In this document: positions 118 through 34,500 of the stretch, one piece after another | Layout of the letters: each line of letters starts with the position of its first letter | Position numbering within the stretch: position 1 is the stretch's first letter | Origin: Lytechinus pictus | Taxonomy: Eukaryota | Length of the DNA stretch: 34,908 bases | Direction of reading: 5' to 3' | NCBI RefSeq assembly: GCF_037042905.1 | Contig: NC_087262.1 | Location: 2,232,001-2,266,908, forward strand | Notes under the pieces: model-generated | Seen by the model: the letters and a program-made list of their open reading frames with translations, nothing else | Databases searched by the model: none | What the model was told of the DNA's origin: nothing | Program-made: the position numbers and the translations under genes

Positions 118-317
118 CACTCTTAACTCCAAGGATTTAAAATGAATAGTGAACAGCCGAATATTAGATTTAGATTTAAACCTTGTTGATTTAAATACAA
201 ATCTAAAAGATTTGAATTTAAATCTTTTGAGATTTAAAAGTTAATCCTTAAGATTTTGAATAAATTCTAAATTCACAGCCGATCTGGATTTATTTCAAAT
301 CTTTGGAATTTAGAGTG
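118..317. mobile_element. MITE with CACT...AGTG termini and TA flanks (EnSpm/CMC-like), copy 1
   Basis: TIR cactcttaactccaaggattt / aaatctttggaatttagagtg; related copy at 10661-10879. Confidence 0.8.
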
Positions 318-899
318 TAAACCTGCGAAAAAGTCAAGACAGCCCCTCAACACCGCCCCTTAAAAAACGATATAATTATAGAGAAGACATGCGGGACCTA
401 GATCAAGTATATCCTTCTAAATAATCATGTAGAGCAACGAGACAACAATATTGATTTCATATTTTCATAACATCGTTACTTAGCCTTATATCCCCAGAGA
501 ATATAAACATGATGGGTCAAGAAGTACATGATCGATATTTCATTTGATTCATAGAAATCAGGACATTTGCAATATTTCTTTGCTGGAGGCCAAGAAACAT
601 TAATAAAACAAACAGAATATACTAAGATATTTTCCAGACACGGGCATTGATCTGTTGATAATAAAGAATAAACATCTCCTGAGTAGATGTGATTTAAAAA
701 GAAAAAAAAAACAGTACGATTTCAAGTCCCATTAAAGGATAAAATGGATTGGAAGTTAGACAGCGTTATCATCTGAATGGATTTATGAAATATATGCATT
801 TGACAGAAAGTGAAAGATAACCGAAATCATTTTCCAAGAATTTGCATGCCTATTAAAAACAATAACTTACTATTATATCCCCCTCCTCCTCCCTCTCTG

Positions 900-10500: not shown

Positions 10501-13500
10501 AATTTGAATTTAAAATAAAAATCGGAGTAGACTTTTTTTTTATGAAGTTTAGTTTTGCCTATCGACTTTTAATTATTGTATGAAGGGAAAAAAAATTCTA
10601 CTTGTAATTATGGGTATAATAATAATGTATATACAGTATTCTATATCGACACCTCGATTACACTCTAAATTCCAAGGATTTAATATAAATCAAGATTGGC
10701 TGTGAATAGGGACCGGTCGAATATCAGATTTAGATTTAAATCTTGCTGATGAAATATAAATCTTAAGGATTTGAATTTAAATCTTTTGAGATTTAATCCT
10801 TAAGATTAATAATAAATCCTCGGCTGATCCCTATTCTCAGCCGATCTGGATTTACTTGAAATCCTCGAAATTTAGAGTGTATGATGACTTTGATAGTAAG
10901 GCAAATATCTACCATGGAAACCTTGGTTTTATTCGGCTGCCAAGTCGTTTTCTGAGGGTAATTCTGTGAAACGGGCATTGGACTCTAATCACGCTATTCG
11001 TTCATTTTATATCTTTACCTGGAGTTGTTGAACAGCGGTGTTTCGCTGTTTCCTAGCCTCGGCTAGCTCCAGCTCCAAGATCTGGATCCTCATGGCTGAG
11101 TCGAGGTGTTTCTGCTCGATGGTCTGAGCCCTCTTCTCAGCAGCCAGCCTCTTCTCCTCGGCCTCGTGAAAACCACGTCTGATGGTGTCGACGAGTTCAT
11201 TGACGCCACCTCCACCAGTCTCTATCACGTCTACGTCAAACTCTGACTCTGATGCCAAGTCCTATGTAAATGATGACAGAAATATACATGTAGATTATAT
11301 GTTTGCGATAGCATTTTATTATGTTACTTCTAATTTCCCCCCTTTTCAACCAAGTCTAATCAAAGAAGAATTAGTCAGCTTTCAGGGGGGCGTTTCATCA
11401 ATATTTCCGTCCGACAAGTTGTCAGATCTGACAACTTTCCTTGATAATGATTGGCCGAGAGTCACTGTTACCATAGTAGCTGTCGGATAAAACAGTACTT
11501 GTCGGATAAAACGTCCGACAAGTCCTTTCATGAAACGCTCCCCAGGTGTCTTCAAGTATAAAAGAAAACGAAACATTACTATCTGGCTTTTTTTTTTTGG
11601 GGGGGGGGGGGTTGGGGGAGGTAGGGTTCTCCCCCCCCCCCTTAACAGATACAAAATTCGTAATAATTATTGTAAAATTATAACCATAACGAATAAAATT
11701 TCAATACAATGTGAGCAATGTTATATCAAAGAATATACCAAACCCTAAACAATATACATACAAGAATCTGTTCCTTAAGTTGAAGTATCTCGGAAGAGTT
11801 CTTTAGGCATTCTGTTAGGAGCTTGCCCGTTAGATGGTTGGCTGGTGGGGACGTCTGAGATGGAAGGGGGATGGTTGGGTCACCGTAAGACCAACACAGC
11901 TTCTGTTGTTATTCATTTAATTGAAGAAATTAATGATAATTATCATTGAGAATAGTATGATTTTGATAATGATGATGACGAACTGATAGCGTCAATAAAT
12001 CACTGTATAGATCAGACGCAGGGGTCTGGGAACGATTTTCTAAGAGGAGGCACTAGTTTGTTTAGAAAAATTAAGTAAATCTTTCATTCATACGTTTATT
12101 CATTCATTATTAACTTATTTATATTTATTCATTTATTTATTTACTTATTAATTAATTAATATATTGATTCATTTATCTAGTTAGTTTTTCATTTATTTTA
12201 ATTTTTGGTTATTATTCATTTATTTCATCATATTATTATTCAATCCTTCTTTCATTCATTTATCCTGTCAACAATTCAAATTTCTATTTAATAAGATAAT
12301 TTAAAATTAAAAGGGACTTCGAATTCAAAAAAGAATAAAGCAATGGGAATTTCGATATTACCCAGTTGTTGTGTTAGGCAATAATATTATTGAGAACGAA
12401 ATTATTGAAGATTGCCAACTACTGAACTCGTATTTTTGTGTAATCCAGAGATAAAAAAAGAATGCTTCAAAATTTAAAGTGTCCGGACACCCCCCCCCCC
12501 ATACTTCTATTATTATTATTTTTTAATACCCTTAAGACATAGTTAATGTTATTCTGTTAGTACCGTATGTGTTCTGTTATTTTTTCTTCTTCATCATTTG
12601 CAATAAACAACCAACAGGGACTTATCATGGCATGGCTTTAATATGGCATAAAAGTGGTAAGAATGACCATGCAAATGATACTTTGAAAATTAGAGATGGA
12701 GGTTAAAAAAGTAAAAACAGATTTAAAAAGCAGGGGTGGCAACGTAAAACAATTTGGGAGCAATGCCTAGCTTTTTTTTCCGTGTAAGTGTTGGGGGTGT
12801 GAGAGGCCTATATAGACCATCGAATTCACTAATTTAGTGATTAGAAAATAGAGTGTGTGCTTACATCCAAGGAGTTCTGAGGAGGACAAGCTGACCCGAT
12901 GCAGGGAAGTGGTCTTCCAAGGACCCAGGGGTGAGGGGAACGAATTCGCCCAGCGCAATACATCGCCAAAAGGTTGTTTCAAGTGATCGAATATAGAAAC
13001 TATGATCTAAACAAAAGGGATAACGGATTAAGGGTAATAAAAGAGATGTAGCATGAATATCTAATTCATTACGGAAAATTTAACCAGTGAAATATGCCTA
13101 ACACTTCCCCAAAATGCATTTTTCACGAGTTCACACGCGATTTCTAGGTCAGCATCACAAGGAATAAGTCACATTTTTTAGGTTAAATAATTGAAAAATT
13201 ACTGCATCAATATTCTTCAAATTTGCTCAGTTCATTCACTGGTATATACTGATAATATACTAACCTGGCGAGATTGAATAAAAGGCTTTGAGAGTTGGAA
13301 ATAGTCGATAATTGCCAAAATAAAATTGACAAGAGTTCTCGTAACGCAAAATTGCAAGAGAATGATGGTTTGTTGACATTAGTTACTAGGGCCAACAAAG
13401 TAGGGAAGTGCGTTAATTATGCAAGCGTTGTTTAACAATAATGCGCTAGTACGAGCGCAACAATTATGCCTAGGCTAGGTATATAATTACTTGCGCTAAT

Positions 13501-16500: not shown

Positions 16501-19500
16501 AGGGGGGCCTACATTATACAAGCTCTGCTTATCAGTTGGCCCTCCCTCCCTTTCAATTATTTATATTTCGATTTGATAATTGTCTATTGTAATTTTATAA
16601 TTTTTTTGTATGTACTTCAAATGTGATTATATGTTACTATGTCAATTGTATCAAAAATTGTAAATATGAAATTGAAAGTGGAAAATAAAATGATTGAATT
16701 GAATTGAATTGAAAAAAAAAAAAAAAAAAAAAAACACCAAGAAATCCGATAGGGAACTGCTTTAGAACAAATATCCGTCGTCAATCGTCGAATCATGTGC
16801 CGGAGCTCGCAGTGGAAGTAGTGAGACGATAATTTAGCATGTTGACATCAAAGAACTGATTTTGAAGAGTAAAAATATTACGCCACCGTGACAAGAATCG
16901 GCCGTAAACTTAGCGTAACGCGGGTGGTCGGTTTCAAAAGACGGGTGCAAATGAGCAAATGTAAAATCGTCGTATTCGTTGTTCGTCGATATATACGCGG
17001 ATTGAATCGAAGTCGCCGAGCGAAACATGGGAATCTGATCTGCTCAATTTTCTGCACAAATGAGACGAAAACTGGGTAAAATTGATGAATATTTTCGCAG
17101 ATACGATGCTTAGAAGATTAGGTGGTCGATAAGGGGTAGTTCTAACCATACTATGGGCTGATGAAAGCGACTCTCACTGAAAATAGAAATAATATAAAAA
17201 ATGAAATGTCGACTGTTTTATTCTTATTTATTTATTTATTTGTTTGTTTGAAAACAGGGAAGCCCATTCAACAATGCGTTGGTCTCACATGGGGCCCTGT
17301 GACAATGTACATATCATAACATAACAATTATATCATTTATATAGCAACATCATAAGAGAGGCATAAATAAATTAGTAAGTACATGTGAAGGAAATATGGA
17401 AACATACAATTAACAATAAAAGTACAATGATTTAAAAAAGCAGATGACGTGAAAGTATTAAGACGTGTATTGTTACAATTACAATTAGCCAAAATCTGAA
17501 AAATTAAGACTTGCCAAGTTTCAAGAACTCGACGTCTTTTCTTCTGTTTTCTTGTGTTCTGTTGAGTCTTGCGAATTCGGCCAACACTAGGCGCTATTAG
17601 GGCTCTGTAGCCTACAATTTACTGATCGATTATTATGTCTGATTTACTGTATCAATATTGATCATTTTGTGGAATATGTCGTTGACAATAATGTTACAAT
17701 CAGTTGCTAGGTTTTGTGATGGGTGCCCAGGCATTGTGTAATGAAATGATGAGCTATGTCAAGTTTTAATACCTCCAGCCGGCCCACAGGCGTACATATT
17801 GGGGGGAGCTTGGGGCCATGGCCCAAAAAGTTTTCTCAACCAAGAAAAAATGGGAGAAAGGTACGTGATTTCAAGGGAAAAGGCTGAAATGTGATATCTT
17901 TCTCCGGATATCAGTAAAAATCTATCCCAAAGTATATTATTTCATTTTTAACACCTGTTTAAAAAAGTCAAACTTTTAACTTTGTAGATTTGTTTTTTCC
18001 CTATACGCCATGTCGGTCCTTTTGTTTTTTTTTGGGGGGGGGTGTTTGTGTTTTTTCTTTATTTTTTGCTCATTACACTACTGCTTCCAGCAAGTTGTTC
18101 CGGGTAAGATCCGAGGATCACCTTGGAATGAAAGGGAGTTTCAGCGTCTTTATTTACAGCGAGAGCGGTGACATGGATGCCCTTCATTGTTGTGTAATTT
18201 ATGTTGAGGAGCAGGTGCCTATGGAGGTTCCACAGATCTTTGTTTATCCCCAATGAACCCAATGGCGAATCACCAAGAAGCTCTTGACCGAAGACTCCCG
18301 CAGGGGAGCATCTAGTTGCCAGGCAATGCGATTAACATTGGGTAAAATATAGATACCAGTAAATGGACCCATAGCGGTAGGCTATATTTGCCGAGTCCAA
18401 GGTTGTCATGTTACATCTTCAGCAACAGTACTGCATCTGTGTACGGTCGTTAAAGGAGCAGTACGACTTTTCGGTGAGGTCGTTGGACGAGCAGATATAC
18501 GACTTTTCGATGAGGTCATTAAAGGAGCAGTACGACATTTTGGTATGGGCGTATATCGTTAAAAGACCAGTAAGCCTACGACATTTTTGTCGTAGTTTTG
18601 TCATTAAACGAACATCACAAAGATCGTGAAGGGCAAATGACGTTTAAAGGGATCCCCTTCCCCATGTTGTTAGTTGGTTTAAATGAAAGCAGAAGAGAAA
18701 AAGGTCGAGGTGGCGGAAGTTTTTAAAATAGATCGCGAAAGCCATAAAATCCCTTTGAAAATGACCAGTAAGTCCGATATCTTGTCTATACAATCTGGAA
18801 GGAAAAAAAAAACTAGTCTAGACATATGTCTAACGTATTTCATCCCTACGGGAAATATAATAACACTCCTGTATGGGGAGCGTTTTATCAACATTTTTAT
18901 CCGACAAGTTGTCAGATCTGACAACTTTCCTTGATGTTGATTGGCTAAGAAGCAGTGTTACTATGGTAACTGTCGGATAAAATGGGAGAATGTCTGACTA
19001 CTCCTTTCATGAAACGCTCCCCTGAGGAGTGTTTCGTGAAATGGCTTGTCAGACATTTTATCCGACAGTTACCATGGAAACTGTGCTCCTCAGCCAATCA
19101 ACATAAAGGAAATTCGTCAGATCTGACAACTTGTCGGATAAAAATGTTGATGAAACGCTCCCCAGCTAAAAGGAGTAGTCCATAAACGATGTTTGGAGAA
19201 ATTACTTTTCTCTAGTTGGAATTCAGGTTCGTTCCATCTCTATAGTACCATGGACCTACTAGCAAAGGTCCATGATAGTACTAGACTTCCTTTTCAAATG
19301 TACTGATTAGAGTTTTAATGGGAACTGCTAGAGTGTGGCATTGATGGAACAGAGAAATGATCGATCCATAGCCTACATTCCTGGATGTTCTTCGAGGGTG
19401 ATAGCCGCATCAATCAACCTTCCCTGGTGTAGCATCCAAACAGGAGGTGAGAGGGGCGTATCGCTGGAACAAAACAATAAAAAGATAGTAAGGTGTCCGA

Positions 19501-22500
19501 TATAAAAATGTTTCTATGTGCAAGTTCGAAGAAATCGAGGATTTTGGTTTCCTGCGCAAGTCATTCCACTATAATATTACGTGCCTTTTAATGTTATCTT
19601 TCACAGATGAGCGCTACACAAAATATGTCTGCATATATTACTATTATTTTAAATACAGTGAATTCTTCATAAGTCGACTTTCCATTTGTCGAATAATCGA
19701 CTTTTAAACTCAAAGCATCTGGCTGGCTGTCTCGTCAGTTGGCAACACAGCTAGGGTCGCCCCCTTTGAATCTATCCTGAACATACCGTGAATGTTATAA
19801 GAGGAAGGTCATGGTGTATGCTATGAGAAGATAATTACTCTCAAGACGATTTAATTACCCCCTCTCTCTAACACGATGTCATTCGCGTGTGGTGGTTTGC
19901 ATTCCCTGTTAAGGAACGTCTGGTTGACGATAAGAAGAGACGTTCAGAGATTGGTGGTAGGGGTAGTCATGGCAGTGGGGGTAGTGGTGGTGATGGGTTT
20001 GGCATACTGTGGCGTATCGTCCACTTCCAACAAATGAAAATCAATTGCATCACGCAATCAGCATAGGTTATTCCTTCTAGATATTCACCAAACATGTTAA
20101 GGGAGTGAATAATAAGAAAAGAATAGGCATAAACCACGGTCTTTTTATCTATAATTATATTATCTATCATTTTGATAGACTGTTTACTCGCTGTTGTTTA
20201 CAAAATCGAAAGGCGCCAGTTGTGCCATTTCATTGGGTCGACCGTACATAAGGTTTACCTTTCTTCTGTTCAAAGTAAACATTTTTTAACACTAGCGTAC
20301 AGATGGGGTGAAATGGGGCCATGGGCCGCCAAATCTTTCCACGACTAAGGAAAAAAAAAAGAAGTAAGGAAAAGAAAAGGGGTTAAATGTGATATTATTG
20401 TCTTAATATGATTTTTTTTTTTTTTTTTAAAGGTCAAAAATTTTGCTCGCTTGCTCCGTTCTCTCGCAGCTTTTTTTTTTTTGGAGGGAGGGGCGAATTT
20501 GCCTCAAACGCCATGTCTGGCCCCCACCACATTGTTGGCCCATTACGCTATACTGGTATTGTGTTAATGTTTATACTGTATTATAATGTTTGTTTTATGA
20601 TGAGAAGAATATAATAATTTGAACTGAATTGTAGTTTGACCTCAACGATCATCCTTACATGACAATTCGAGAAATATTTCGATTTGTTACCCTTTTATTT
20701 CTATTACTGTATTTTTCAGGTAAACACAGCTTATGATCACCCTTCATTGGAAGCTAACATTCAATTTGTCGTTGTTCGGATTGTACTACTGAACAGGCAG
20801 CAGGTGATTATCCCTTTCAAATACGAAGTGATTCTCCCATTTCTTTTCATAATTTGTGTAAAGTATAGAAAATTTTATTAAACGCAATATCCATTTTTAT
20901 ATTGATATTTAAAAGATCTATGCCCGGTCTTCAAATTCTTGTATTAAAACTGTGTGCATTTGGTAGATGGACAGAATAATATACTATCACATAACTGATT
21001 TCTGTAAATAAACATACAAAAGTATTGTTGGGCTTCTAATTCTAATATCAGAATACTATATTTACAATACTTTTATTGTATATAACATATTTTTCATTTA
21101 AACTTTAAAAGTAATGTAGTAGTATGTAATTATATTTTCCTTGAACATGCTGAAGATTAGGAAATCATTAGTTGTTGGGTAGTGATTATTGATGGTCAAT
21201 ATCATCATTCTTTTTACTTTCTTTCTCCAGTCGAAATACATGGTAGTAGAGAACAACGCTCCAGCCAGTTTGACCAATGTTTGTCGATGGGCAGCTACTC
21301 AGACCACACGTGATGACTCGGCCCCAGAGCATCACGACCATGCCATCTTTATCACCAAAGAAAACTTCGGACCAGCTGGTAGGTATCTTCCACCTCTCCT
21401 TGCTTTAGAAATAAACACAGTATTTCACAGTGTGTTCAAATTGTGTTCATAGTGCGGATTACAACGTGATATCTTCACACTGTAGAAAAGCTCAAATTTA
21501 ACATATTTCGGACTTTTCGCATTTACTACGGGGAAACTCTCTACAACGCACCATTTCCTTTGAAAATGCAAGCCAAATTACAATGGAAAGCTGAGAAGCT
21601 TTTGTCGAAAGTTGGTGGACCGGGGCAGCATCGGAATATCTTGACCATGGACAACGACATATTTGCAATTAACGTCCGGTGCAAGTCTTCGGATGATCTG
21701 CTGTCCCAGTCCACCAACTTTCGACGAAAGCCTCTCAGCTCTCCATTGTGGTTTTAATTGCATTTTTAAAGGAATCGATGCGTTGTAGAGAGTATCTCCG
21801 TAGTAAATGCGAAAACTTCCTGAGAGCACTCTCACGGTAACTGTGTTCCCAGTGTGAATATATCTTTACATTGTTGAAGTTATGCGTTTAAATCATTGTG
21901 GATCATATCTTCAGATACTCCACTACTTGAACATTCTGTGAACACACAGTGAAACAATGATATTTCTCAGCAGGGTTGGGTCCCTTATAAATAGTTGTAA
22001 CATGCAGGCGTATCATTATAGGTTTGACCATGACTTTACAGAGATGTGACTGTTTCATAAATGCATATAGTAGCTCGATAGCAGTTACTTTATCCATTTC
22101 ACATCTCATGACCAATTGAATTCATGACACAGAAACCAAGACCCCTTTTGTTGAGGGTTTCCAAAATTAAAACTGGCCAATTTATGCTATATTAATAGTT
22201 ACACCAATGAAACCGACCTCAATCGAATAGCTTTGACTTTCTTGAGTCGGTTTATGCCAATGCTACTGTGGCATCAAGAAGAGATGAAGTTCAAAACAAG
22301 TAACGAGTGTCGAATCAATGTTAATTTGAACTTTGAAGTTTGGCTCAATGACAGTCAGTTAGCTGCATGACAGTCTTTGTCAGTCAATCCGCATTATTGG
22401 TGGCAGCGGTGGGATGCTAGGAGTAATGATGAAACGAACTGTGATAACTTGGCAAATCTCAAATATTATTTAGCGTTTTTGTTAATATTTGTATTTACAA

Positions 22501-25500: not shown

Positions 25501-28500
25501 GTACATTTAAAATCCAGGTCCCACAGCAGGCGGATTTGTAAATAGAGAAAATCAAACGAGCATATTATGCTGTCAAGTCCGTCAGAGTCGTATGTAAAAT
25601 AAGAATGTTTTGACCTTTTAAAGTCTGCAGATGAGTGAGCCGATGATGAAGCACACACTTACTTTTTATTTTGTTATTATTATATGAAATATTATTGTAT
25701 GAAATATTTCAAACAATTTTGTTTTATATGACAATAAGAAAATTATTGATTGATTCATAATCCGTTACAACAATTGAAAATCCACATGTCCACAGTCATG
25801 GCAGTGGAATTAAAAACCATTTGGATTTGTGTGCATTTTAAAGAGGGAAAAATTAAATATTTCGTGTTATAAAGTGCAAGGAATGTGTGACATTGGGGTA
25901 AATCCGTGACGTCATACTGGGGGATAGAAAATAGATCACCCCCCTTGAACAAAATGTTCACTGCTCGGATTAATGCCAGTGGTTTGTGACGTCATCATTT
26001 CTCTTTTTATATAGCACCTGTGTTCTGCATAATTTTTTTTTTTTTTTAAAGGCCAAACTTTAAAAAGCCACAACGTTCTTTATTTCACACCCGACGTTTG
26101 CCGGAACTTTCAGCATCATACCTGTGTATTTTTTTTATTTTTCTCTCTCTCTATACATTCAAATTCGCATGTTCATAAAGTGGGCGTGACCTAAATAGAT
26201 TTTCAATTACCCAAAAGGGCTTCCACTGGGCAATGATATTAAGAAATTCTATGGAGCAAATTGCCCCTGAGATTTAGAAATATTCTTTATTTTACTCATG
26301 TAAACACCACTTTTGTGACTTACCACCATTTTCTGCCCTCCTCCAATCTCATCAAAAGTTTTGGCATGGAGCACGACGGCCAAGGAAACACGTGTGAAGA
26401 TGATGCGTCTCGAGGTTCCATCATGGCGCCCGTCGTTATATCGACCTACATTCACTACTTCTGGTCGAAGTGTAGTCGTATCGAGCTCAACCGATACCTA
26501 TCGTGAGTATCCGATACCTTTAACCCCCTTTCTCTCTTCCTTCCATTCCTCCGTCCGTCTTCTTCTGCTTCTAATCCATAGTTTCGGGATGGAACACGAC
26601 GGCGTCGGCAACACCTGTAAGCGCGACCAGTTACGGGGCTCTATCATGTCGCCGGTCGTCAAGGCCACTTACACCCGGTACTTCTGGTCGGTTTGCAGTC
26701 AGTACGAGCTTCACCGGTATCTCTCGTGAGTAGGTTCTGCTTTGTACATCCGGTTTGCCATATGGATTCGGTTTTACTTTCTTTCGGTTTTCTTGTCATC
26801 CGACTCACCCTCGCATCCGACTTATCCGTTCATCCGACTAGTTTCCTCTTTCAAATTTTATTTTCGTTTTGAGTTTTTCGTTATTTCATTTTCATTTGTG
26901 ATTTTGGAGCATGGTGCTTGGTTTAATGGTATTTTTTTATTTGATTGATCTAACTTGATTCCTAATCTGTTTATCGTTGATCGTTTGTTAGTGTTTGTAA
27001 CCTTGTATATTCGTCTACTTGTATTCAGTGTTGTTTTGTACAATTATATATTCAGTTAAATTTATAGACTCATTTTATCAACTCTTTAAGTGGTTGGTTC
27101 ATTGTTCATAATGTATTGGTTAGAGGAAGACCAAATCAATGGAAAGGTTTTCTGAAGAGCGAATGATTGGTCTGAACGAGGAACGCAATCTTTCGTAGGA
27201 GGGAAACTGACTGCTGTAGTCAGTTTATTGCAGCAATAAATGATGATGATGGAATATGAAAGGTTCTGTGTTAATATCATTTCTCATTCTTTCTTACTCC
27301 CAAGTTTACCTTGCGCTATATCGTTGTATGAAGCAGAAAGTTTTCATTAAACCATGAGGATGTATTATTGTGTGACTCACTTGTTTGTCAAACAAAGTTT
27401 AAGTTTTCTCAACCATTTCATCTCGTGTTCAGTTGGGAAATCATATTAATAAAATATTTACCATAATATTCATTGCGTGTTCTGATGATATTGGATCTTA
27501 CCTGTGGATCGAATTCTATCATTGCCATCCTCGTGTAGACCCTATGTTATCATGTGACTCGTTATTTGTGTTGTGTTGTATTTGGCCGATGTTTGTGTCT
27601 GGTTGTATTTGGTTTTGTTCGGGATTGCTTTCTTCTGACTTTAACAATTCTATGGGAGTGTGTATTTGAGTTTTGTCAGACGTGTATCAATCAGATATGA
27701 TTATTTACGTCTGGGACCGACCTTTAACGTCACCATCCGAAAGACGTGACCAGGGCTCGAACCTCGAACCTTATGCATCAATTTGTAACTTCCCCACATA
27801 GCTTGGATTACAGGCGCACGCCACAACGCCCAGGGAGTGTGCATGTATTGCAAATCAGTAGAACAGTATAACATTGTTTGACAGTTAACAGTATAGACCT
27901 ACATTGAAGGCATCCCTGCTGGAAACCTCAAAGTCACACAGTGTTTTCATCGTGTATTCAGTGTGTTCACACTCACAGTGCATTCATTGTATATTCAGTG
28001 TGTTCACAGCGTGTCCACAGTGTGTTCACCGTATATTCAGTGTTTTCACAGTGTTCATTGTATATTCAGTGTGTTCACTGTATATCCAGTGTGTCCACAG
28101 TGTGTTCACTGTATATTCAGTGTGTTCACAGTGTCTTCATTTATATTCAGTGTGTTCACAACGTGTTCACAGTGTGTTCACTGTATATTCCGTGTGTCCA
28201 CAGCGTGTTCACTGTATATTCAGTGTGTCCACAGTGTTTTCATTGTATATTCAGTGTGTTCACAGCGTGTCCACAGTGTGTTCATTGTATATTCAGTGTG
28301 TTCACAGCGTGTCCACAGTGTGTTCACTGTATATTCAATGTGTTCACAGCGTGTCCACAGTGTGTTCACTGTATATGCAATGTGTTCACAGCGTGTCCAC
28401 AGTGTGTTCACTGTATATTCAGTGTGTTCACAGCGTGTTCACAGTGGCCCGTATTCTAAAGTCGGGTTTAACTTAAACTCAGGATTAAGTATGGATAGCC

Positions 28501-31500
28501 AATTGTTACATAAATCAATAACAGTAGAGATATCATATTTCAGCTCATTTGGCTTTCAAATCATTCATAATTATATAAGAAGTGTAAATGGATGATTGTC
28601 TTCACCATCAATGAATCAGGAAAGAACACAATAAACATAAGAAACATAGAACTTAATAAAAATGTTGACACTTTTGGCTTCCCATAATTTTAGCACAGAG
28701 TTAGACCATGGTCTAAGTTAAACCTGTCTTCAGTGTGTATTCAGTGTGTTCACAGCGTGTCCACAGTGTGTTCACAGTGTATTCATAGTATATTCAGTGT
28801 GTTCACAGCGTATTCATTGTATTAACGGTCTTTTGACAGTGGGACACACAGTATATTCACATTGCGTTTAGTGTTTTTCATAGTGTTTTCAAACTGTGTT
28901 CACAGTGTGTTCATTATGTGTTCACAGTGTGTTCAAATTGTATTCACAGTGACTCCAAATAATGTTCACAGTGTTTTACAATGTGTGCACAGTGTGTCCA
29001 TGTGACGGACTAAATTTAAGTGTATGAATAATTTCACACTTTGGACACAGTGTGTACACATACAGGACTCTGAATATGAGATTTACAATGTTTGATTTTA
29101 GCATTGTAAAAAGAACAGTGTAAAAATGCATGGATTCGCATCATGTTCAACACTGTGAACACACTTTGTGATACACTGTGACACTATGAATTTTTCCACT
29201 AGGGATTAGGCCCGACAAATTTCGTCATTCGTTTTACTTCGTTTCACGGAATATAACAAATATTAATGCATGACAAACACTGGAAGAAATGGAGTTTTAT
29301 TGTACGAACAACATGAGAAATGATTAACATTCACCAGGAACATAACATAGTTATATTTACACTGATTTCCCCCAAATAATATGCATGGTCTGATTGTTGA
29401 AAAGCAAGAACATGAATTGCTGGAAAGTGAAATAATACTACTACTAATAATAACAATAATAATGATGATAATAATGATAATAAAAAACCACGAAGCATAT
29501 CACTTATTCATGAGGATTATATGTTTCCTGTTGTTTCTTTTCACCAATTAACAACATTGATAACATTTACTTTTCTGATAATTGTATAAGCACTTAGAGG
29601 AATCTGAATGTTGAAACGGTTATCCGTACTCACTTTAATTCCTTTTTCTAGTCGGTACTATTGCTTGTGGGATGATCCTTTCGATAGCGGATATCCGGAG
29701 GTCCGGCAGTATCCGGGTCGGCGCTATACAATGGATGAACAATGTCGGTTTGATTTCGGTCACGGCTACCGCACGTGTACCGCGGTAAGTGACAGTTTTT
29801 GGAGGTGAAACCTTTTCAGTGGCAGTTTTGATAATCGGGAATGTGATTTATTCAAATCCTAACAAGCAGAACAATTTCCTTCAGAATTTATATGGGAATA
29901 TACTGTACATGTATAAGTTTTAAGAACATGGATTTCCTTAATCAAAATGTGAGCAAGATTTTTGTTCAGAGTTCATTTGATACGTCTAAAGTTGTGCAAT
30001 TGATCCTTTAGGATTTTCGTAAGGAGAAAAAATTATTGTTACCTATATGCATAAAACTAAAGTTGTTGAGAATATCAATTATGCAGTCGAAGGAATAAAG
30101 ATTATGATATTTGAATAATTTTATGGCAGTCGTTTTAACAATGTTTTAACGTTTCTCAATTTGAATGAAATTCAACAGTTTTATTACAATCCATGTCAAG
30201 AGTTGTGGTGCATGCATCCGACCAGTTACAACTGCCGTACACGTAACGGACCACCACTGGATGGGACCGCCTGTGGTCCGGGCATGGTAAGGTGTAGCTT
30301 ATGGTCACTATACTGAAAGTTCCCCGTGGAATGAAACAAGGCTTATCTTCCGCTCACAAATATAGCTTTAAAAAAGATGTGATAAACTTTATGGCTCCAA
30401 ATATGATGCAGTCAGCTATGTAACTACTCATAGGTGAACATGGTAAAGAAAAGTTAAGGTTATGCTGTGAGCGGAACGTCAAACCCTTATTTCATTTATG
30501 GGCTTAATAATTGCCATTTACTAACCAACTTCTTCATCTTTCATTCTCGCTTTACCCAACCGGAAACAGTTCAATGATTACGACAAATGCGACCAACTGT
30601 GGTGTATGCACTACCGCAAAAGATATGTTTGTCGGACTAAGAAAGGTCCGCCGTTAGACGGCACAGAATGTGGTCCGGGAATGGTAAGAAAATGGTCGGA
30701 TTTCCCGCCTGTCGGATGACGATGTGGAATTTCTTAGGCTCGTGATACAGCAAAAAAAAAGCTCTTCAACATTTTGTTTTACGGGGGTGAATTCTTAGGG
30801 GGGTTTGGGTATCAGAAAATTAAAGAGGAGTTGAACACCTGTACCCCCCCCCTCTGCGTATGCTACTGTATAGGATTATGGGTTTGCTTTCATATTAGAG
30901 GGATTTAAACTAGATCAACACTGTTTCCAGAACATACGTCTTCTGAATACTGATGATGTCATTTTATGAAGATTCTGTATACGATAGTGGTTGGGCTAGT
31001 AGTTGGATTTAATTGTTTCAACCTTTATAATAAAATAGAAAAATATGAAAAATGCTAAAGAAAGATGGGCCAAAATTGTATTACAAAATTGAAAATGAGG
31101 ACGATATAATATATCAGAGTATTTCTTGGTCTACATAAATTGAACCAAGGGAAATCTCTCTTACATTAAGACGATTCCTATTAATGTTCATAAAGTATAT
31201 CGTTCCACCTTATAGAGAAAATGAACTTTATCTTTGTTATCGTTTTTTTGGTTTCTTGCTCATTTAAGTGACACATTGTATATATTAGAACCTTATGTAT
31301 TCATTATTTTAAGAAAGAGAACTTGGCGGGTTAAAATAGTTCCTGGATTCCACATTGTCTCTGATTGGTCGGGTTTCCCTATTGAATTCTGCACGAGAGC
31401 ACCTTGCATAGATCCTTGTGGTTTTGCACATTATCGGAGAAGTACTACATCAGGCAGACTGGAATGAAAATGCAAAATGTATATATTACATTCATTATTT

Positions 31501-34500
31501 ATACATGTCTCCGATTTGTTTAGATGAAACAGAGAAGAGGAAAAAAAGCATGAATATCATTTTGATTATTTCAATTTATGAATAGAGCTTGTAATGAAAT
31601 CGAAATTCCAAGTTGGTATGTTTGTGCATGAAGCTCGTGTCTCGTTTGATGAATTATGCATGAGTTGCATCTCGATATTTCTTGATTTCATATTGCAAAG
31701 AATTGCTGTAAGAGTTGGTCGTTTAAATTAAAATAATAAGCATTGCGTCTTTACCCAACAAAGAACACAAATTATAGCAGCGAATTCGTATGAACAATAC
31801 AAGGTTTTGGCCTAGTTTATCTTTCCTAATTCGGTTTTCTGATGCGCAAACTGACGCTGATTGGGTTAAATTATTAACCAATCGCGTTTGTCATTTCACC
31901 GTGATCCTCATGTCGGTTTGGGAACTAGGTATTTGATGTGTTCGTAATTTCTTTGTCACGATTGCTGTTGCGAATGAACTGTATACATTTCCATTCTTAC
32001 TAATGTATATAACCTTAAAATAAGCAATATTTCGACGATGGATTATTTTGAATTGTACTGTTTACAATCTAAAATGGATTAATTTAAATATTACTATATT
32101 TTCAAACTTTGTTCATCTGCTTTTATAGTAGTCTAGTTCCTTTGTTTGTTTTCTATTCAAATATGGTAGACCTGAATAATTATGTGTGTTTATTTTTTTA
32201 AACAATTTTTTACGTTCATTTTCTTTATGTTTGCATCTTTTCTTGCGTTTCTGCTTATTTGACTGTGTGTGATTTTTTTTTATTGTTCTCATGTTTGGTT
32301 TATTCTATATATTTGTTTATTTTGTTTCAGGCAAAAAATAAACAGGTATAATAACACTATGATAACATATATATAATAAGAATAACATGTATGAGAAGAA
32401 TGATTTTGATGATAATGATGAGGATAATAATAATGATAATAAACTGTGGAGCGTTGTGGCCCAGTGTATTAGTCTTCTGACTTTGAAACAGAGGGTTGTG
32501 GGTTCGAATCCCAGCCATGGCGTAATTTGCTTCATCAAGAAATTCGTCCACATTGTGCTGCACTCAACCCAGGTGAGGTGAATGGGTACCTGGCAGGAAT
32601 TTATTCCTTGAAATGCGTGTGCGCTGTAATCTTAGTAATTACGGCTGCCAAGTTACAGCTGGGGTAATAATATCCAAGTCCTTTGGAAGTGCATAGAGAC
32701 ATTATTCATAATGTGATATGCGCTATACAAGAACTGTATATTATTATTATTATTATTATTATCATTATTAATGATAATGATAGAATAATGAAAATACCAC
32801 CAGCCAGTGATCCGGAATAGCCAAAAGGGTTGTTCTTATTGAAACTTTCTCTCTTATTTGTCGCTGGTTTACAAACATAGTAATAATAAATAAATAAAAC
32901 TTGAAATGGAACAAATTCATTTTGATTCATGACAAGAGCAAATAATAGCTTGTAAATCAATAGGAATCAGCTCAAAGTGTAACCATTATCATGGACTTAT
33001 TCTGACTATCACGATTTCAATATATTGAAATGATTTATTGTTGAAGAAAACCAAGCGTTGAAATTCTCTCGAAAATGCTGGCCGGTAATGAAAATAAATA
33101 ATTCTTACGACATTTTAAGTCGAATTCGTGAGGAATGTTGAGCTAAAAACTAATCTTTGAAGATTCCTACCGGAAGGTTGAGAATATGATAGAATCCTTA
33201 AAAAAAAAAAATATTGCTTCATTTTCAAATCCGTTGCTTTTTTTTTCGAGGGACAAAGTTGCATGAGCCTGGTTTCTGTAGGGTCATGCAATAATCATAC
33301 CGGATTCCTTTAGAAATAATATTCACACATCATTCTGAACAGGTGGTTAATCGATCGGTATCGGTTAATTGTTAGGCTCGCAGATAATTTTTCTTCCCTG
33401 GATTTGAAAAATGAATAATATGCTACTTAAAAAGAAACCAAATTATCACAAATTTAGAAATCTTCTCTGTGGTGGCATAAAGAAATGTGGGATGAATAAC
33501 CCCCCCCCCCCTTCCCTGTACATCCAAAGTTTTTCTTCTTCGCTCCTGCACCCGAACATCTTCTTTGTCCTCTATTTTCCGGCCCTAATTTGAAAAAAAA
33601 TGGCAACACATGATCTGATAAAATCCAAGTATGTCAAACTGCATGTTGGTGAAGCACATAAAATTTGTTCCCATTTTAAACCAAAAAACTTCTTCTTTTA
33701 ACTCCTGTCTGAACAGTGGTGCGTTCAAGGAACTTGTAGGTATTCACAGAATCAGATCGATGGTCATTGGAGCGCGTGGACTGGATGGTCAGAATGTTCA
33801 TATTCGTGTGGTACAGGTACTAAGTACAGGACAAGACAATGCGATAACCCAAGGTAAACGATCATGATTGATTGATTGATCGGTTGGTTGATTGGTTGAA
33901 TGAATGATCAAGTAACTGATTGATTGATTATTTGATTGATTGATTCATTGATTGATTGAATGGCTTGATTGAAAGCTTGAATACTCATTGATTGATTGAT
34001 TGATTGATTGACTAACTTAATAGATAGACTAATTGTTGGTCGATGTGTTGATAGGTTGGTTGGTTGAATGAATGATCAAGTAACTGATTGATTGATTGAT
34101 TGATTAATTGATTGATTGATTGATTGATTCGATGATTTATGGATTAATTAATTGATTGAATGAATGTTTAATTGATTGAGTGAGTAAAATGCTAATTTAT
34201 TGATTAATTGGTAAATTGGTTTACTGACTGTTCAATGGATAAATCAATTGGCTGATTTGTCAATTTTTATCAGATTGATTCTTTGATTTTCCCCATTTAG
34301 ACCCCAATACGGAGGACGGGAGTGCTCAGGTAAAGGCGAGGATGTTAGACTTTGCAATACTCAGGTGTGTAAAGCAACCTTTCTGTTTCATTGCATTTTT
34401 TAGCCACTGCCAATTAGTTTATCTGATGATATGATGACAAACGGTATATATCCATAATACAAAGATGATTGTGAATGGTATGATTATATCTGTTTGAAAT

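What the first reader, a model, noticed from the sequence alone, without database searches (positions are those of the whole stretch)
30301..30525. G-U-rich intronic RNA stem that would fold the H1 donor next to the H2 branch point
Seen: nested complementarity across the 283-nt H1-H2 intron. TTCCGCTCACA (30348-30358) pairs with TGTGAGCGGAA (30466-30476) perfectly. TATAGCTTTAA (30361-30371) pairs with TTAAGGTTATG (30454-30464) fully, using 3 G-U pairs. AATGAAACAAGG (30330-30341) pairs with CCTTATTTCATT (30485-30496) with 1 mismatch. Pairing extends more weakly to CCCGTG/TATGGG and ATGGT (30301)/GCCAT (30517). The stem starts about 14 nt after the donor and ends just before a perfect TACTAAC (30519-30525), so the folded donor-to-branch distance is about 20-25 nt, similar to the linear distance in the F pair. 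The G-U bias on this strand points to selection on RNA. Inference: structure-mediated steric exclusion, so the gene would solve the same problem in two ways.
Basis: partly seen in the sequence, partly recalled or inferred. Interest (0 to 1): 0.8.

Follow-up and report, generated by a model that had tools for sequence, protein, structure and literature searches.

The report
Conserved RNA hairpin between two alternative exons
In a sea-urchin ADAMTS protease gene, the intron between two exons used one-or-the-other carries a single-copy hairpin whose counterpart, different in sequence but alike in position, also sits in a distantly related urchin, so it probably helps control exon choice, though how is unproven.

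Summary
The long-range pairing beats 999 of 1000 composition-matched shuffles.

It is not a genome-wide MITE. The segment and its arms are unique in the 811-Mb genome, whereas the three other strong inverted-repeat windows tested in this 35-kb window are multi-copy repeats.

RNA contigs and reads show G-H1-I and G-H2-I, never H1-H2. Annotated isoforms agree, so H1 and H2 are mutually exclusive as far as the data reach.

The same exon pair exists in Diadema, a different echinoid order. Its intron is unalignable but has its own about 46-bp hairpin, ranked 2nd of 132 locus windows. The geometry matches: the stem starts 27-36 nt after the H1 donor and ends 67-72 nt before H2.

Within Lytechinus and within Diadema the basal helices are almost unchanged while the apex and loop change freely.

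The G-U/strand argument is not significant. The "folded distance" argument is non-specific, because shuffled introns also fold short. Steric exclusion remains an untested candidate mechanism.

The scan noted a similar stem in another gene of this genome (s1-317534), which I did not check.

Verdict: a probably selected splicing-related RNA structure (about 0.55), mechanism open.

The parts
29653..29784 (+). Upstream constant exon G (disintegrin-like region)
   Evidence: Translation without stops. The donor at 29783/4 is joined to H1 or to H2 in RNA.
30179..30286 (+). Alternative exon H1 (108 nt, 36 aa). It is the commoner form in the runs laid.
   Evidence: Joints G->H1 and H1->I in X1, X2, X4 and X22. 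94% identical in protein to Diadema H1.
30287..30569 (+). The 283-nt intron between H1 and H2, GT..AG. No run shows it spliced out on its own.
   Evidence: No 30286->30570 joint is among the listed joints.
30301..30305 (+). 5' strand of the weak extension helix (ATGGT)
   Evidence: Complementary to 30513-30517. Not in the window's MFE. In L. variegatus it is extended to 7 bp and is in the MFE.
30323..30328 (+). 5' strand of the basal helix (CCCGTG)
   Evidence: Pairs with 30497-30502. Unchanged in L. variegatus.
30330..30341 (+). 5' strand of helix h1
   Evidence: Pairs with 30485-30496, 11 of 12. One change in L. variegatus, A-U to G-U.
30348..30358 (+). 5' strand of helix h2 (perfect 11 bp)
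   Evidence: Unchanged in L. variegatus.
30361..30371 (+). 5' strand of the apical helix h3 (11 bp, 3 G-U)
   Evidence: Remodelled in L. variegatus: 6 of 22 nt changed, plus a 16-nt indel next to it.
30372..30453 (+). Loop of 82 nt, with small local stems
   Evidence: The loop is 189 nt in D. setosum and about 435 nt in D. antillarum.
30454..30464 (+). 3' strand of helix h3
30466..30476 (+). 3' strand of helix h2
30485..30496 (+). 3' strand of helix h1
30497..30502 (+). 3' strand of the basal helix (TATGGG)
30513..30517 (+). 3' strand of the extension helix (GCCAT)
   Evidence: G30513 is A in L. variegatus, which turns U.G into U-A.
30519..30525 (+). TACTAAC, the likely branch site of H2 (branch A at 30524). 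An AG-free pyrimidine-rich tract follows up to 30567.
   Evidence: Sequence. Conserved in L. variegatus, absent in Diadema. The branch point has not been mapped.
30570..30683 (+). Alternative exon H2 (114 nt, 38 aa)
   Evidence: Joints G->H2 and H2->I in X2. Used in NCBI models of L. variegatus X1 and X2, of L. pictus and of both Diadema species.
33717..33854 (+). Downstream constant exon I (start of the first thrombospondin repeat)
   Evidence: Acceptor at 33716/7 in the joints. Translation.

Best explanation
The segment is a single-copy intronic RNA hairpin of about 40 bp in four to five helices. It loops out the middle of the 283-nt intron between the two mutually exclusive exons H1 and H2 of an ADAMTS3-like gene. 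The urchin is a Lytechinus, most likely L. pictus.

I read it as a maintained cis-element of H1/H2 splice choice. Its base holds the H1 donor (27-36 nt upstream of the stem) and the H2 branch/3' splice-site region (stem end 67-72 nt before H2) together. The apex and loop are free to change.

Shown:
- The pairing exists and is unique in the genome.
- H1 and H2 are used exclusively in RNA.
- An equivalent hairpin of unrelated sequence sits in the same intron of Diadema.
- The basal helices are conserved within both genera.

Inferred:
- That it folds in vivo.
- That it acts on splicing.

The most likely mode (about 0.25 absolute) is that the folded intron cannot be spliced as a unit. U1 at the H1 donor and U2 at the H2 branch site are tethered to the same helix end. 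The region just upstream of the branch site, which U2 snRNP (SF3a/SF3b) needs, abuts the stem. H2 could then be joined only to exon G, and H1 only to exon I.

The next most likely mode (about 0.2) is that the stem simply damps the strong H2 3' splice site and so sets H1 as the default.
For: Observation and significance:
- The helices are present.
- Only 1 of 1000 shuffles has as good a long-range duplex.
- The window is 2nd of 123 in its locus by z.

Not a repeat:
- BLAST of 30301-30525 against the own genome finds only itself.
- 24-nt arm patterns with up to 3 mismatches give no more hits than reversed controls.
- The same tool finds 1247-1933 candidates for three other top inverted-repeat windows, 21514, 11326 and 18967.
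- RNA depth over the hairpin is 0-1.6, against about 1e5 over a nearby SINE-like repeat.

Mutual exclusion:
- Joints G->H1, H1->I, G->H2 and H2->I are seen, and no H1->H2 joint.
- NCBI isoforms carry H1 or H2, never both.
- Both exons are multiples of 3, so NMD cannot police double inclusion.

Independent lineage:
- The D. setosum H1-H2 intron is 396 nt with no alignable intron sequence.
- It has 46 long-range bp, from +28..+81 to 271..324.
- No shuffle of 200 is as good, and it ranks 2nd of 132 locus windows.

Geometry: the stem-to-exon distances are 36 and 67 nt in the window and 27 and 72 nt in Diadema. The length difference lies in the loop.

Within-genus conservation:
- Lytechinus basal helices show 1 change in 58 nt, and it preserves pairing (permutation p 0.007).
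- Diadema outer helices show 0 changes in 50 nt (p 0.006).
- Apical helices, loops and a 246-nt insertion vary.
Against: - There is no strict covariation. The two lineages cannot be aligned, and within genera only two pair-preserving one-sided changes hit the basal helices.
- The split into basal and apical helices was made after seeing the alignments. With all helices counted, conservation is not significant (p 0.26 and 0.15).
- Contiguous arms are no more conserved than the loop.
- The + strand is hardly more stable than the - strand, so a DNA-level palindrome is not excluded.
- By raw energy the intron ranks only 8 of 123 and 12 of 132.
- There is no structure probing and no mutational data.
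- RNA depth is low (8 reads on H1->I in the raw run), so rare double inclusion could be missed.
- For the steric mode specifically, shuffled introns also reach graph distances of 30-50.
- The core stem leaves 36 + 22 = 58 nt of linker. That is at, not below, the roughly 50-nt threshold quoted in PMC7969005.
- Known 5'ss-to-branch bridging stems help splicing rather than block it.
Confidence: 0.55

Rival explanations
1. It is a neutral inverted repeat. It would be the relic of an old hairpin-forming insertion or a local inverted duplication that drifts in a tolerant intron. The Diadema hairpin would then be an unrelated second accident.
For: - Urchin introns do collect hairpin repeats. At least three multi-copy inverted-repeat elements lie in this 35-kb window.
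- A 246-nt element with terminal inverted repeats sits in the very same intron of D. antillarum.
- The size, about 180 nt, is MITE-like.
- There is little strand asymmetry.
- Whole-arm conservation is not elevated.
- Raw-energy ranks are modest.
Against: - It is single-copy where the same search readily finds repeat families (against 70-72).
- No target-site duplication is evident at the arm ends.
- A strong non-repeat hairpin falling in the same intron in two orders has a joint rank-based chance of roughly 1e-3 to 1e-2.
- The basal helices are conserved within both genera.
- The distances to the splice sites are alike in both lineages.
Confidence: 0.3
2. It is selected, but not as a splice-choice element. 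It could be a DNA palindrome bound by a factor, a docking platform for a dsRNA-binding protein, or a precursor of a small RNA.
For: - Both strands fold about equally well.
- The basal helices are conserved.
- A 164-nt intron fragment, 30387-30550, persists as a contig in RNA run X1.
Against: - No Rfam family matches in 29600-33900 at E <= 1.
- The sequence is not conserved between orders, only the pairing and its position relative to the splice sites. That points to an RNA-level role tied to splicing.
- Depth over the arms in RNA is near zero.
- The hairpin is too long and too interrupted for a typical miRNA precursor.
Confidence: 0.1
3. It is chance complementarity in an AT-rich intron.
For: The whole-intron MFE z is only -2.44. 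Many 10-12-nt inverted matches occur nearby.
Against: Only 1 of 1000 shuffles reaches the long-range duplex energy. The arm5:arm3 duplex is -44.1 kcal/mol against -15.8 +/- 3.2 for shuffled arms, with 0 of 300 as good.
Confidence: 0.03

Closest known systems
Steric-hindrance mutually exclusive exons (alpha-tropomyosin exons 2/3; OGDH exons 4a/4b with distant branch points 25-46 nt from the 5' splice site, PMC7969005)
   Same: There are two tandem homologous exons and no splicing between them. The logic is that U1 at the upstream donor and U2 at the downstream branch site cannot both assemble. The F1/F2 pair of the same gene (79-nt intron) looks like the classical form.
   Different: Here the linear donor-to-branch distance is 237 nt, and the AG-free zone places the branch site near the 3' end, not near the donor. 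Proximity would have to be made by a hairpin. I found no described case of that.
Competing docking-site/selector RNA pairings in exon clusters (Dscam exon 6, 14-3-3 xi, srp exon 4 in PMC4691838, ATE1 exons 7a/7b in PMC7797038)
   Same: Conserved intronic base pairing is associated with a mutually exclusive exon pair.
   Different: In those systems the arms lie in different introns, an exon sits in the loop, and two pairings compete. Here both arms lie in the one intron between the exons, no exon is looped out, and I found no significant competitor.
Stems that bridge the 5' splice site and branch point in long yeast introns, and the adenovirus E1A intron hairpin (Chebli et al. 1989, cited in PMC7969005); the yeast cases are from my own knowledge
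   Same: The architecture is the same. A stem loops out the middle of the intron and shortens the operational distance between splicing signals.
   Different: Those stems promote removal of the intron that holds them. Here that intron is never seen removed on its own.
MITE-like palindromic repeats of this genome (e.g. window 21514-21815)
   Same: An imperfect inverted repeat of a few hundred bases inside an intron.
   Different: Those have more than 1000 candidate copies. The H1-H2 hairpin has one copy.
Scan note s1-317534: a conserved stem between two mutually exclusive exons of an RBM4/lark-type gene in the same genome
   Same: As described there, it is the same arrangement: a stem inside the intron between two alternative exons, preserved in a distant urchin.
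   Different: It is another gene. It is an unchecked AI note, and I did not test it.

Membership tests
Mutually exclusive exon pair | Tandem homologous exons of compatible length and phase | tested here: met
   H1 is 108 nt and H2 is 114 nt, both in phase 0. Their proteins are 63-66% identical.
Mutually exclusive exon pair | Transcripts contain one or the other exon, not both and not neither | tested here: met
   Joints G-H1-I and G-H2-I only. NCBI isoforms X1-X3 carry a single H exon. Depth is low, so rare double inclusion is not excluded.
Classical steric-hindrance MXE | Branch point of the downstream exon within about 50 nt (linear) of the upstream donor | tested here: not met
   The best branch site, TACTAAC, is 237 nt from the donor. 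The AG-free zone runs 30472-30567, so no distant branch point is expected.
Docking/selector competing structures | One element that can pair alternatively with two or more selectors in different introns | tested here: not met
   No significant alternative partner was found. Exon G against the intron gives z about 0 in three species. The H1 and H2 flanks share no homology.
Conserved functional RNA structure | Pairing beyond chance | tested here: met
   Ranks.
Conserved functional RNA structure | Compensatory (two-sided) covariation across species | tested here: inconclusive
   Only close pairs can be aligned. Two one-sided pair-preserving changes hit basal or extension helices. One apparent A-U to G-C change in the apical helix depends on an ambiguous alignment. 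In Diadema 5 apical pairs are broken.
Conserved functional RNA structure | Structure present in distant orthologues | tested here: met
   An analogous hairpin is present in D. setosum and D. antillarum. This is two independent lineages only.
Conserved functional RNA structure | Folding in vivo and an effect of disruption | not testable with these tools
   Needs probing and mutagenesis.
MITE / transposon-derived inverted repeat | Multiple related copies in the genome | tested here: not met
   with positive controls.
MITE / transposon-derived inverted repeat | Target-site duplication flanking the terminal repeats | tested here: not met
   The flanks ..AAAGTTC and CTTAATA.. show no duplication. 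An old one could have decayed.
Rfam RNA families | Match to a curated covariance model | tested here: not met
   No hit at E <= 1 in 29600-33900.

The most novel reading that the evidence does not exclude
A stable hairpin turns an otherwise ordinary 283-396-nt intron into one that cannot be spliced as a unit. It would do so by tethering the upstream donor and the downstream branch site to one helix end. That would be a structure-made version of steric hindrance, a further way to enforce mutually exclusive splicing. It would have been kept for more than 200 million years in echinoids, and may be used in other urchin genes (scan note s1-317534).
Probability: 0.22. Interest if true: 0.8.

Novelty: new variant of a known kind. 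Interest (0 to 1): 0.58.

Why it matters
Double inclusion here would stay in frame, so NMD cannot police it. No rule that could enforce exclusivity by itself (short intron or distant branch point, U2/U12 incompatibility, competing docking/selector pairings) fits this pair. It therefore needs some other safeguard.

A maintained hairpin wholly inside the inter-exon intron, with conserved distances to both splice sites, is a concrete candidate that a few minigene mutants could test. If it works as a block, it adds a new mode to the short list of mutual-exclusion mechanisms. It would also show that a stem across an intron can hinder as well as help.

If it only tunes H2 use, it is one more case of structure-regulated alternative splicing, in a phylum where almost none has been described.

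For the protein, the choice swaps a cysteine-rich piece of the disintegrin-like module next to the active site.

Tried and rejected
1. Multi-copy MITE: rejected (positive controls 70-72).
2. G-U/strand bias as evidence of RNA selection: not significant. The asymmetry lies within the locus background.
3. Docking site in exon G pairing with the 3' arm. One duplex (29704-29771 with 30457-30516, -45.2 kcal/mol) beat 299 of 300 shuffles. It was the best of about 12 comparisons, and whole-region tests gave z about 0 in all three species. Dropped.
4. H1 exon 30216-30227 pairing with 30690-30701, just after the H2 donor. It is conserved in L. variegatus but not in Diadema, so it is probably chance or lineage-specific.
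5. Homology between the H1 and H2 flanks, prompted by a shared GTGGAAT at +40 of both donors: no better than shuffles.
6. A distant branch point near the H1 donor: excluded by AG dinucleotides throughout the 5' part of the intron.
7. Known RNA family: none.
8. Folded donor-to-branch distance as a discriminator. It is shorter than shuffles in Lytechinus (4 of 100 and 0 of 100 as short) but not in Diadema (68 of 100 and 28 of 100), and shuffles already give 30-50.
9. More orthologous introns could not be obtained:
   - The H2-ORF search found nothing.
   - The metagenome scan found nothing.
   - Amphiura and Apostichopus proteins are not on record.
   - The S. purpuratus and D. antillarum paralogues have a single H exon.
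10. Elevated conservation of whole arms: not found.
Full report
**What the gene is.** The window carries, on the + strand, part of an ADAMTS3-like metalloprotease gene of a sea urchin.
- Open frames give the propeptide, the HESGH active site, two copies of the following exon (F1 and F2), exon G, two copies of the next exon (H1 30179-30286, H2 30570-30683), and the first thrombospondin repeat (exon I from 33717).
- A 98-aa piece finds a 69%-identical full-length protein of Diadema setosum.
- That protein finds L. variegatus isoforms. Their cluster holds an L. pictus model whose F2 and H2 are 100% identical to the window. The window is therefore a Lytechinus, most likely L. pictus (inference).

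**The observation.**
- The MFE of the 283-nt intron contains 40 long-range pairs. They form four helices: 6, 11 of 12, 11 and 11 bp, with 5 G-U in all.
- These enclose an 82-nt loop.
- The fifth helix, ATGGT/GCCAT, is possible but is not in the window's MFE.
- Whole-intron MFE z is -2.44.
- A statistic aimed at what was claimed, the best long-range duplex, gives -53.2 kcal/mol. For 1000 dinucleotide shuffles the mean is -32.9 and the sd 4.7, and 1 of 1000 is as good.

**Background in real DNA.** I scored all non-overlapping same-size windows of the 35-kb window in the same way.
- The intron ranks 8th of 123 by raw energy and 2nd of 123 by composition-corrected z.
- I tested three of the other top windows, 21514, 11326 and 18967. 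All are multi-copy repeats, with 1247-1933 first-look candidates and dozens of copies at 85-99% identity. One of them is a 302-nt palindrome with 117-nt arms. A fourth top window (28023) lies in a tandem-repeat tract and was not searched.
- The hairpin segment finds only itself.
- Its arms, searched as 24-nt patterns with up to 3 mismatches, give no more hits than reversed controls.
- RNA depth over it is 0-1.6, while a SINE-like repeat 2 kb away reaches about 1e5.
Among the strong inverted repeats tested in the window, this is the only one that is not a repeat.

**Are H1 and H2 mutually exclusive?** I laid four RNA runs on 29600-33860.
- G->H1 and H1->I joints appear in all four runs. The raw-read run has 4 and 8 reads.
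- G->H2 and H2->I appear in run X2, as a 169-nt contig of depth 5.6 beside the H1 contig of depth 4.0.
- No 30286->30570 joint is listed.
- NCBI models agree. L. variegatus X1 is F1+H2, X2 is F2+H2 and X3 is F2+H1. L. pictus is F2+H2, and both Diadema species use H2. None has both H exons.
- H1 and H2 are 108 and 114 nt, so double inclusion would stay in frame and NMD cannot be the safeguard.
- The likely H2 branch site, TACTAAC, is 237 nt from the H1 donor. AG dinucleotides fill the 5' part of the intron. Classical linear steric hindrance or a distant branch point is therefore excluded (threshold of about 50 nt from PMC7969005).

**Close relative.** The L. variegatus intron is 298 nt and about 90% identical.
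- As contiguous segments the arms are no better conserved (88-90%) than the loop and flanks (91-92%).
- Helix by helix the picture differs. The basal helices (outer, h1, h2; 58 nt) carry one change, A-U to G-U.
- The extension helix carries one change, U.G to U-A.
- Two further changes next to the extension helix lengthen it to 7 bp in L. variegatus, where it enters the MFE.
- The apical helix h3 has 6 of 22 nt changed and a 16-nt indel beside it.
- Random placement of blocks of the same sizes gives p = 0.007 for the basal helices and p = 0.26 when h3 is included.
- The split into basal and apical was made after seeing the data.

**Distant relative.** Diadema is in the order Diadematoida and Lytechinus in the Temnopleuroida. 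The split is more than 200 My old (my own knowledge).
- D. setosum has the same H1/H2 pair (94% and 76% protein identity) but no F2.
- Only exons align between the two loci.
- Its 396-nt H1-H2 intron has its own hairpin of 46 long-range bp. The helices are 13, 11, 8 bp and smaller, running from +28..+81 to 271..324.
- The same statistic gives -70.3 kcal/mol against a shuffle mean of -49.7 and sd of 5.6, with 0 of 200 as good.
- It ranks 12th of 132 locus windows by raw energy and 2nd of 132 by z.
- This was a single test, with a statistic fixed beforehand, on the only distant orthologue I could obtain.
- The stem starts 27 nt after the donor (36 in the window) and ends 72 nt before H2 (67 in the window). 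The 113-nt difference in intron length lies almost wholly in the loop (189 against 82 nt).
- In D. antillarum the intron is 644 nt. A 246-nt element with terminal inverted repeats sits in the loop.
- Between the two Diadema species the outer helices (50 nt) have no change (permutation p 0.006). The inner helices lose five pairs, and all helices together give p 0.15.
- Paralogous ADAMTS genes of S. purpuratus and D. antillarum have a single H exon.

**What does not hold.**
- The G-U argument. There are 5 G-U against 1 C-A. The + and - strands differ by 1.6-3.6 kcal/mol. This asymmetry is ordinary for the locus in all three species.
- The folded-distance argument. With the donor and branch site kept single-stranded, the ensemble-average graph distance is 31.5 (window), 24.4 (L. 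variegatus) and 34-40 (D. setosum). Introns with shuffled interiors already give 48.5 +/- 9.8, 51.1 +/- 8.8 and 31-46. A short folded distance is thus a generic property of folded RNA, and in Diadema it is not shorter than chance.
- The core stem leaves 36 + 22 = 58 nt of single-stranded linker, which is at the quoted threshold rather than below it.

**Mechanism.** The data fit a maintained stem whose base, not its apex, matters, and whose position relative to both splice sites matters.
- Known stems of this architecture (yeast 5'ss-to-branch bridges, the E1A hairpin) shorten operational distances and help removal of their intron. Here that intron is never seen removed on its own.
- I therefore favour, with modest confidence, a blocking role. 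U1 at the H1 donor and U2 at the H2 branch site are tied to one helix end, and the stem abuts the 20-25 nt upstream of the branch site that U2 snRNP (SF3a/SF3b) needs. H2 could then be used only by exon G's donor, and H1's donor only with exon I.
- A simpler alternative is that the stem damps the strong H2 3' splice site (TACTAAC plus a good pyrimidine tract) and makes H1 the default.
- I found no competing partner of the docking/selector kind, no Rfam family, and no description of a hairpin-made steric block in the papers searched.
- The scan holds an unchecked note of a similar conserved stem between two alternative exons of another gene in this genome. It is a lead for generality, not support.

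**Verdict.**
- Observation: confirmed.
- Interpretation: partly supported. The stem is real, unique and probably selected. The strand-bias and distance arguments are weak. Steric exclusion is untested.
- Rough odds: 0.55 that this is a selected RNA element of H1/H2 splice choice; 0.30 a neutral inverted repeat; 0.10 selected for something else; 0.03 chance.

Noticed in passing
window 32317-32745: A SINE-like element in the H2-I intron has enormous depth (up to about 1.6e5 summed contig depth; about 2600 reads per strand in the raw run) in all four RNA runs, with many variant letters, so it is a very abundant transcribed repeat family. ARAGORN finds no tRNA in it and Rfam finds no family.
   Followed up: partly
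window 21514-21815: A 302-nt palindromic element with 117-nt arms (86% complementary) and a 68-nt spacer. The genome holds at least 1693 first-look candidates, with copies about 88-91% identical. It is a MITE-like hairpin repeat inside an ADAMTS intron.
   Followed up: partly
window 11326-11608 and 18967-19249: Two more multi-copy repeats with strong internal inverted pairing (1933 and 1247 first-look candidates; copies up to 99% and 92% identical). The first looks very young.
   Followed up: partly
L006 about 56252-56497 (Diadema antillarum): A 246-nt insertion with about 21-nt terminal inverted repeats lies in the loop of the Diadema H1-H2 hairpin. It is absent from D. setosum. The loop tolerates a transposon while the stem base stays unchanged.
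   Followed up: partly
L002 and L006 (Diadema) versus window 26582-26725: Exon F2, the second copy of the exon after the zinc-binding site, is present in the window and in L. variegatus but absent in both Diadema species. The F pair is therefore younger than the H pair.
   Followed up: partly
L004 31984-32091 and 32187-32303 (S. purpuratus paralogue): The paralogous ADAMTS3 gene of S. purpuratus has a tandem duplicate of the HExxH active-site exon, with only about 95 nt between the copies. This may be another mutually exclusive pair in the family.
   Followed up: no
window 30216-30227 and 30690-30701: Twelve nt inside exon H1 are complementary (11 of 12) to the sequence 7 nt after the H2 donor. 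This is kept in L. variegatus but not in Diadema.
   Followed up: partly
window 30387-30550: RNA run X1 holds a 164-nt contig (depth 2.5, no differences) covering the loop end, the 3' arm and the branch site, but not the exons. It is either unspliced or lariat RNA, or a trace of DNA.
   Followed up: no
window 30202 and 30205: Runs labelled organism B differ from the window by G>A at two third-codon positions of H1, while organism A matches. The runs thus come from two close taxa or populations.
   Followed up: no
window 27900-29000: A long tandem-repeat tract in the F2-G intron gives long spurious open frames on the + strand and a strong self-pairing score.
   Followed up: no
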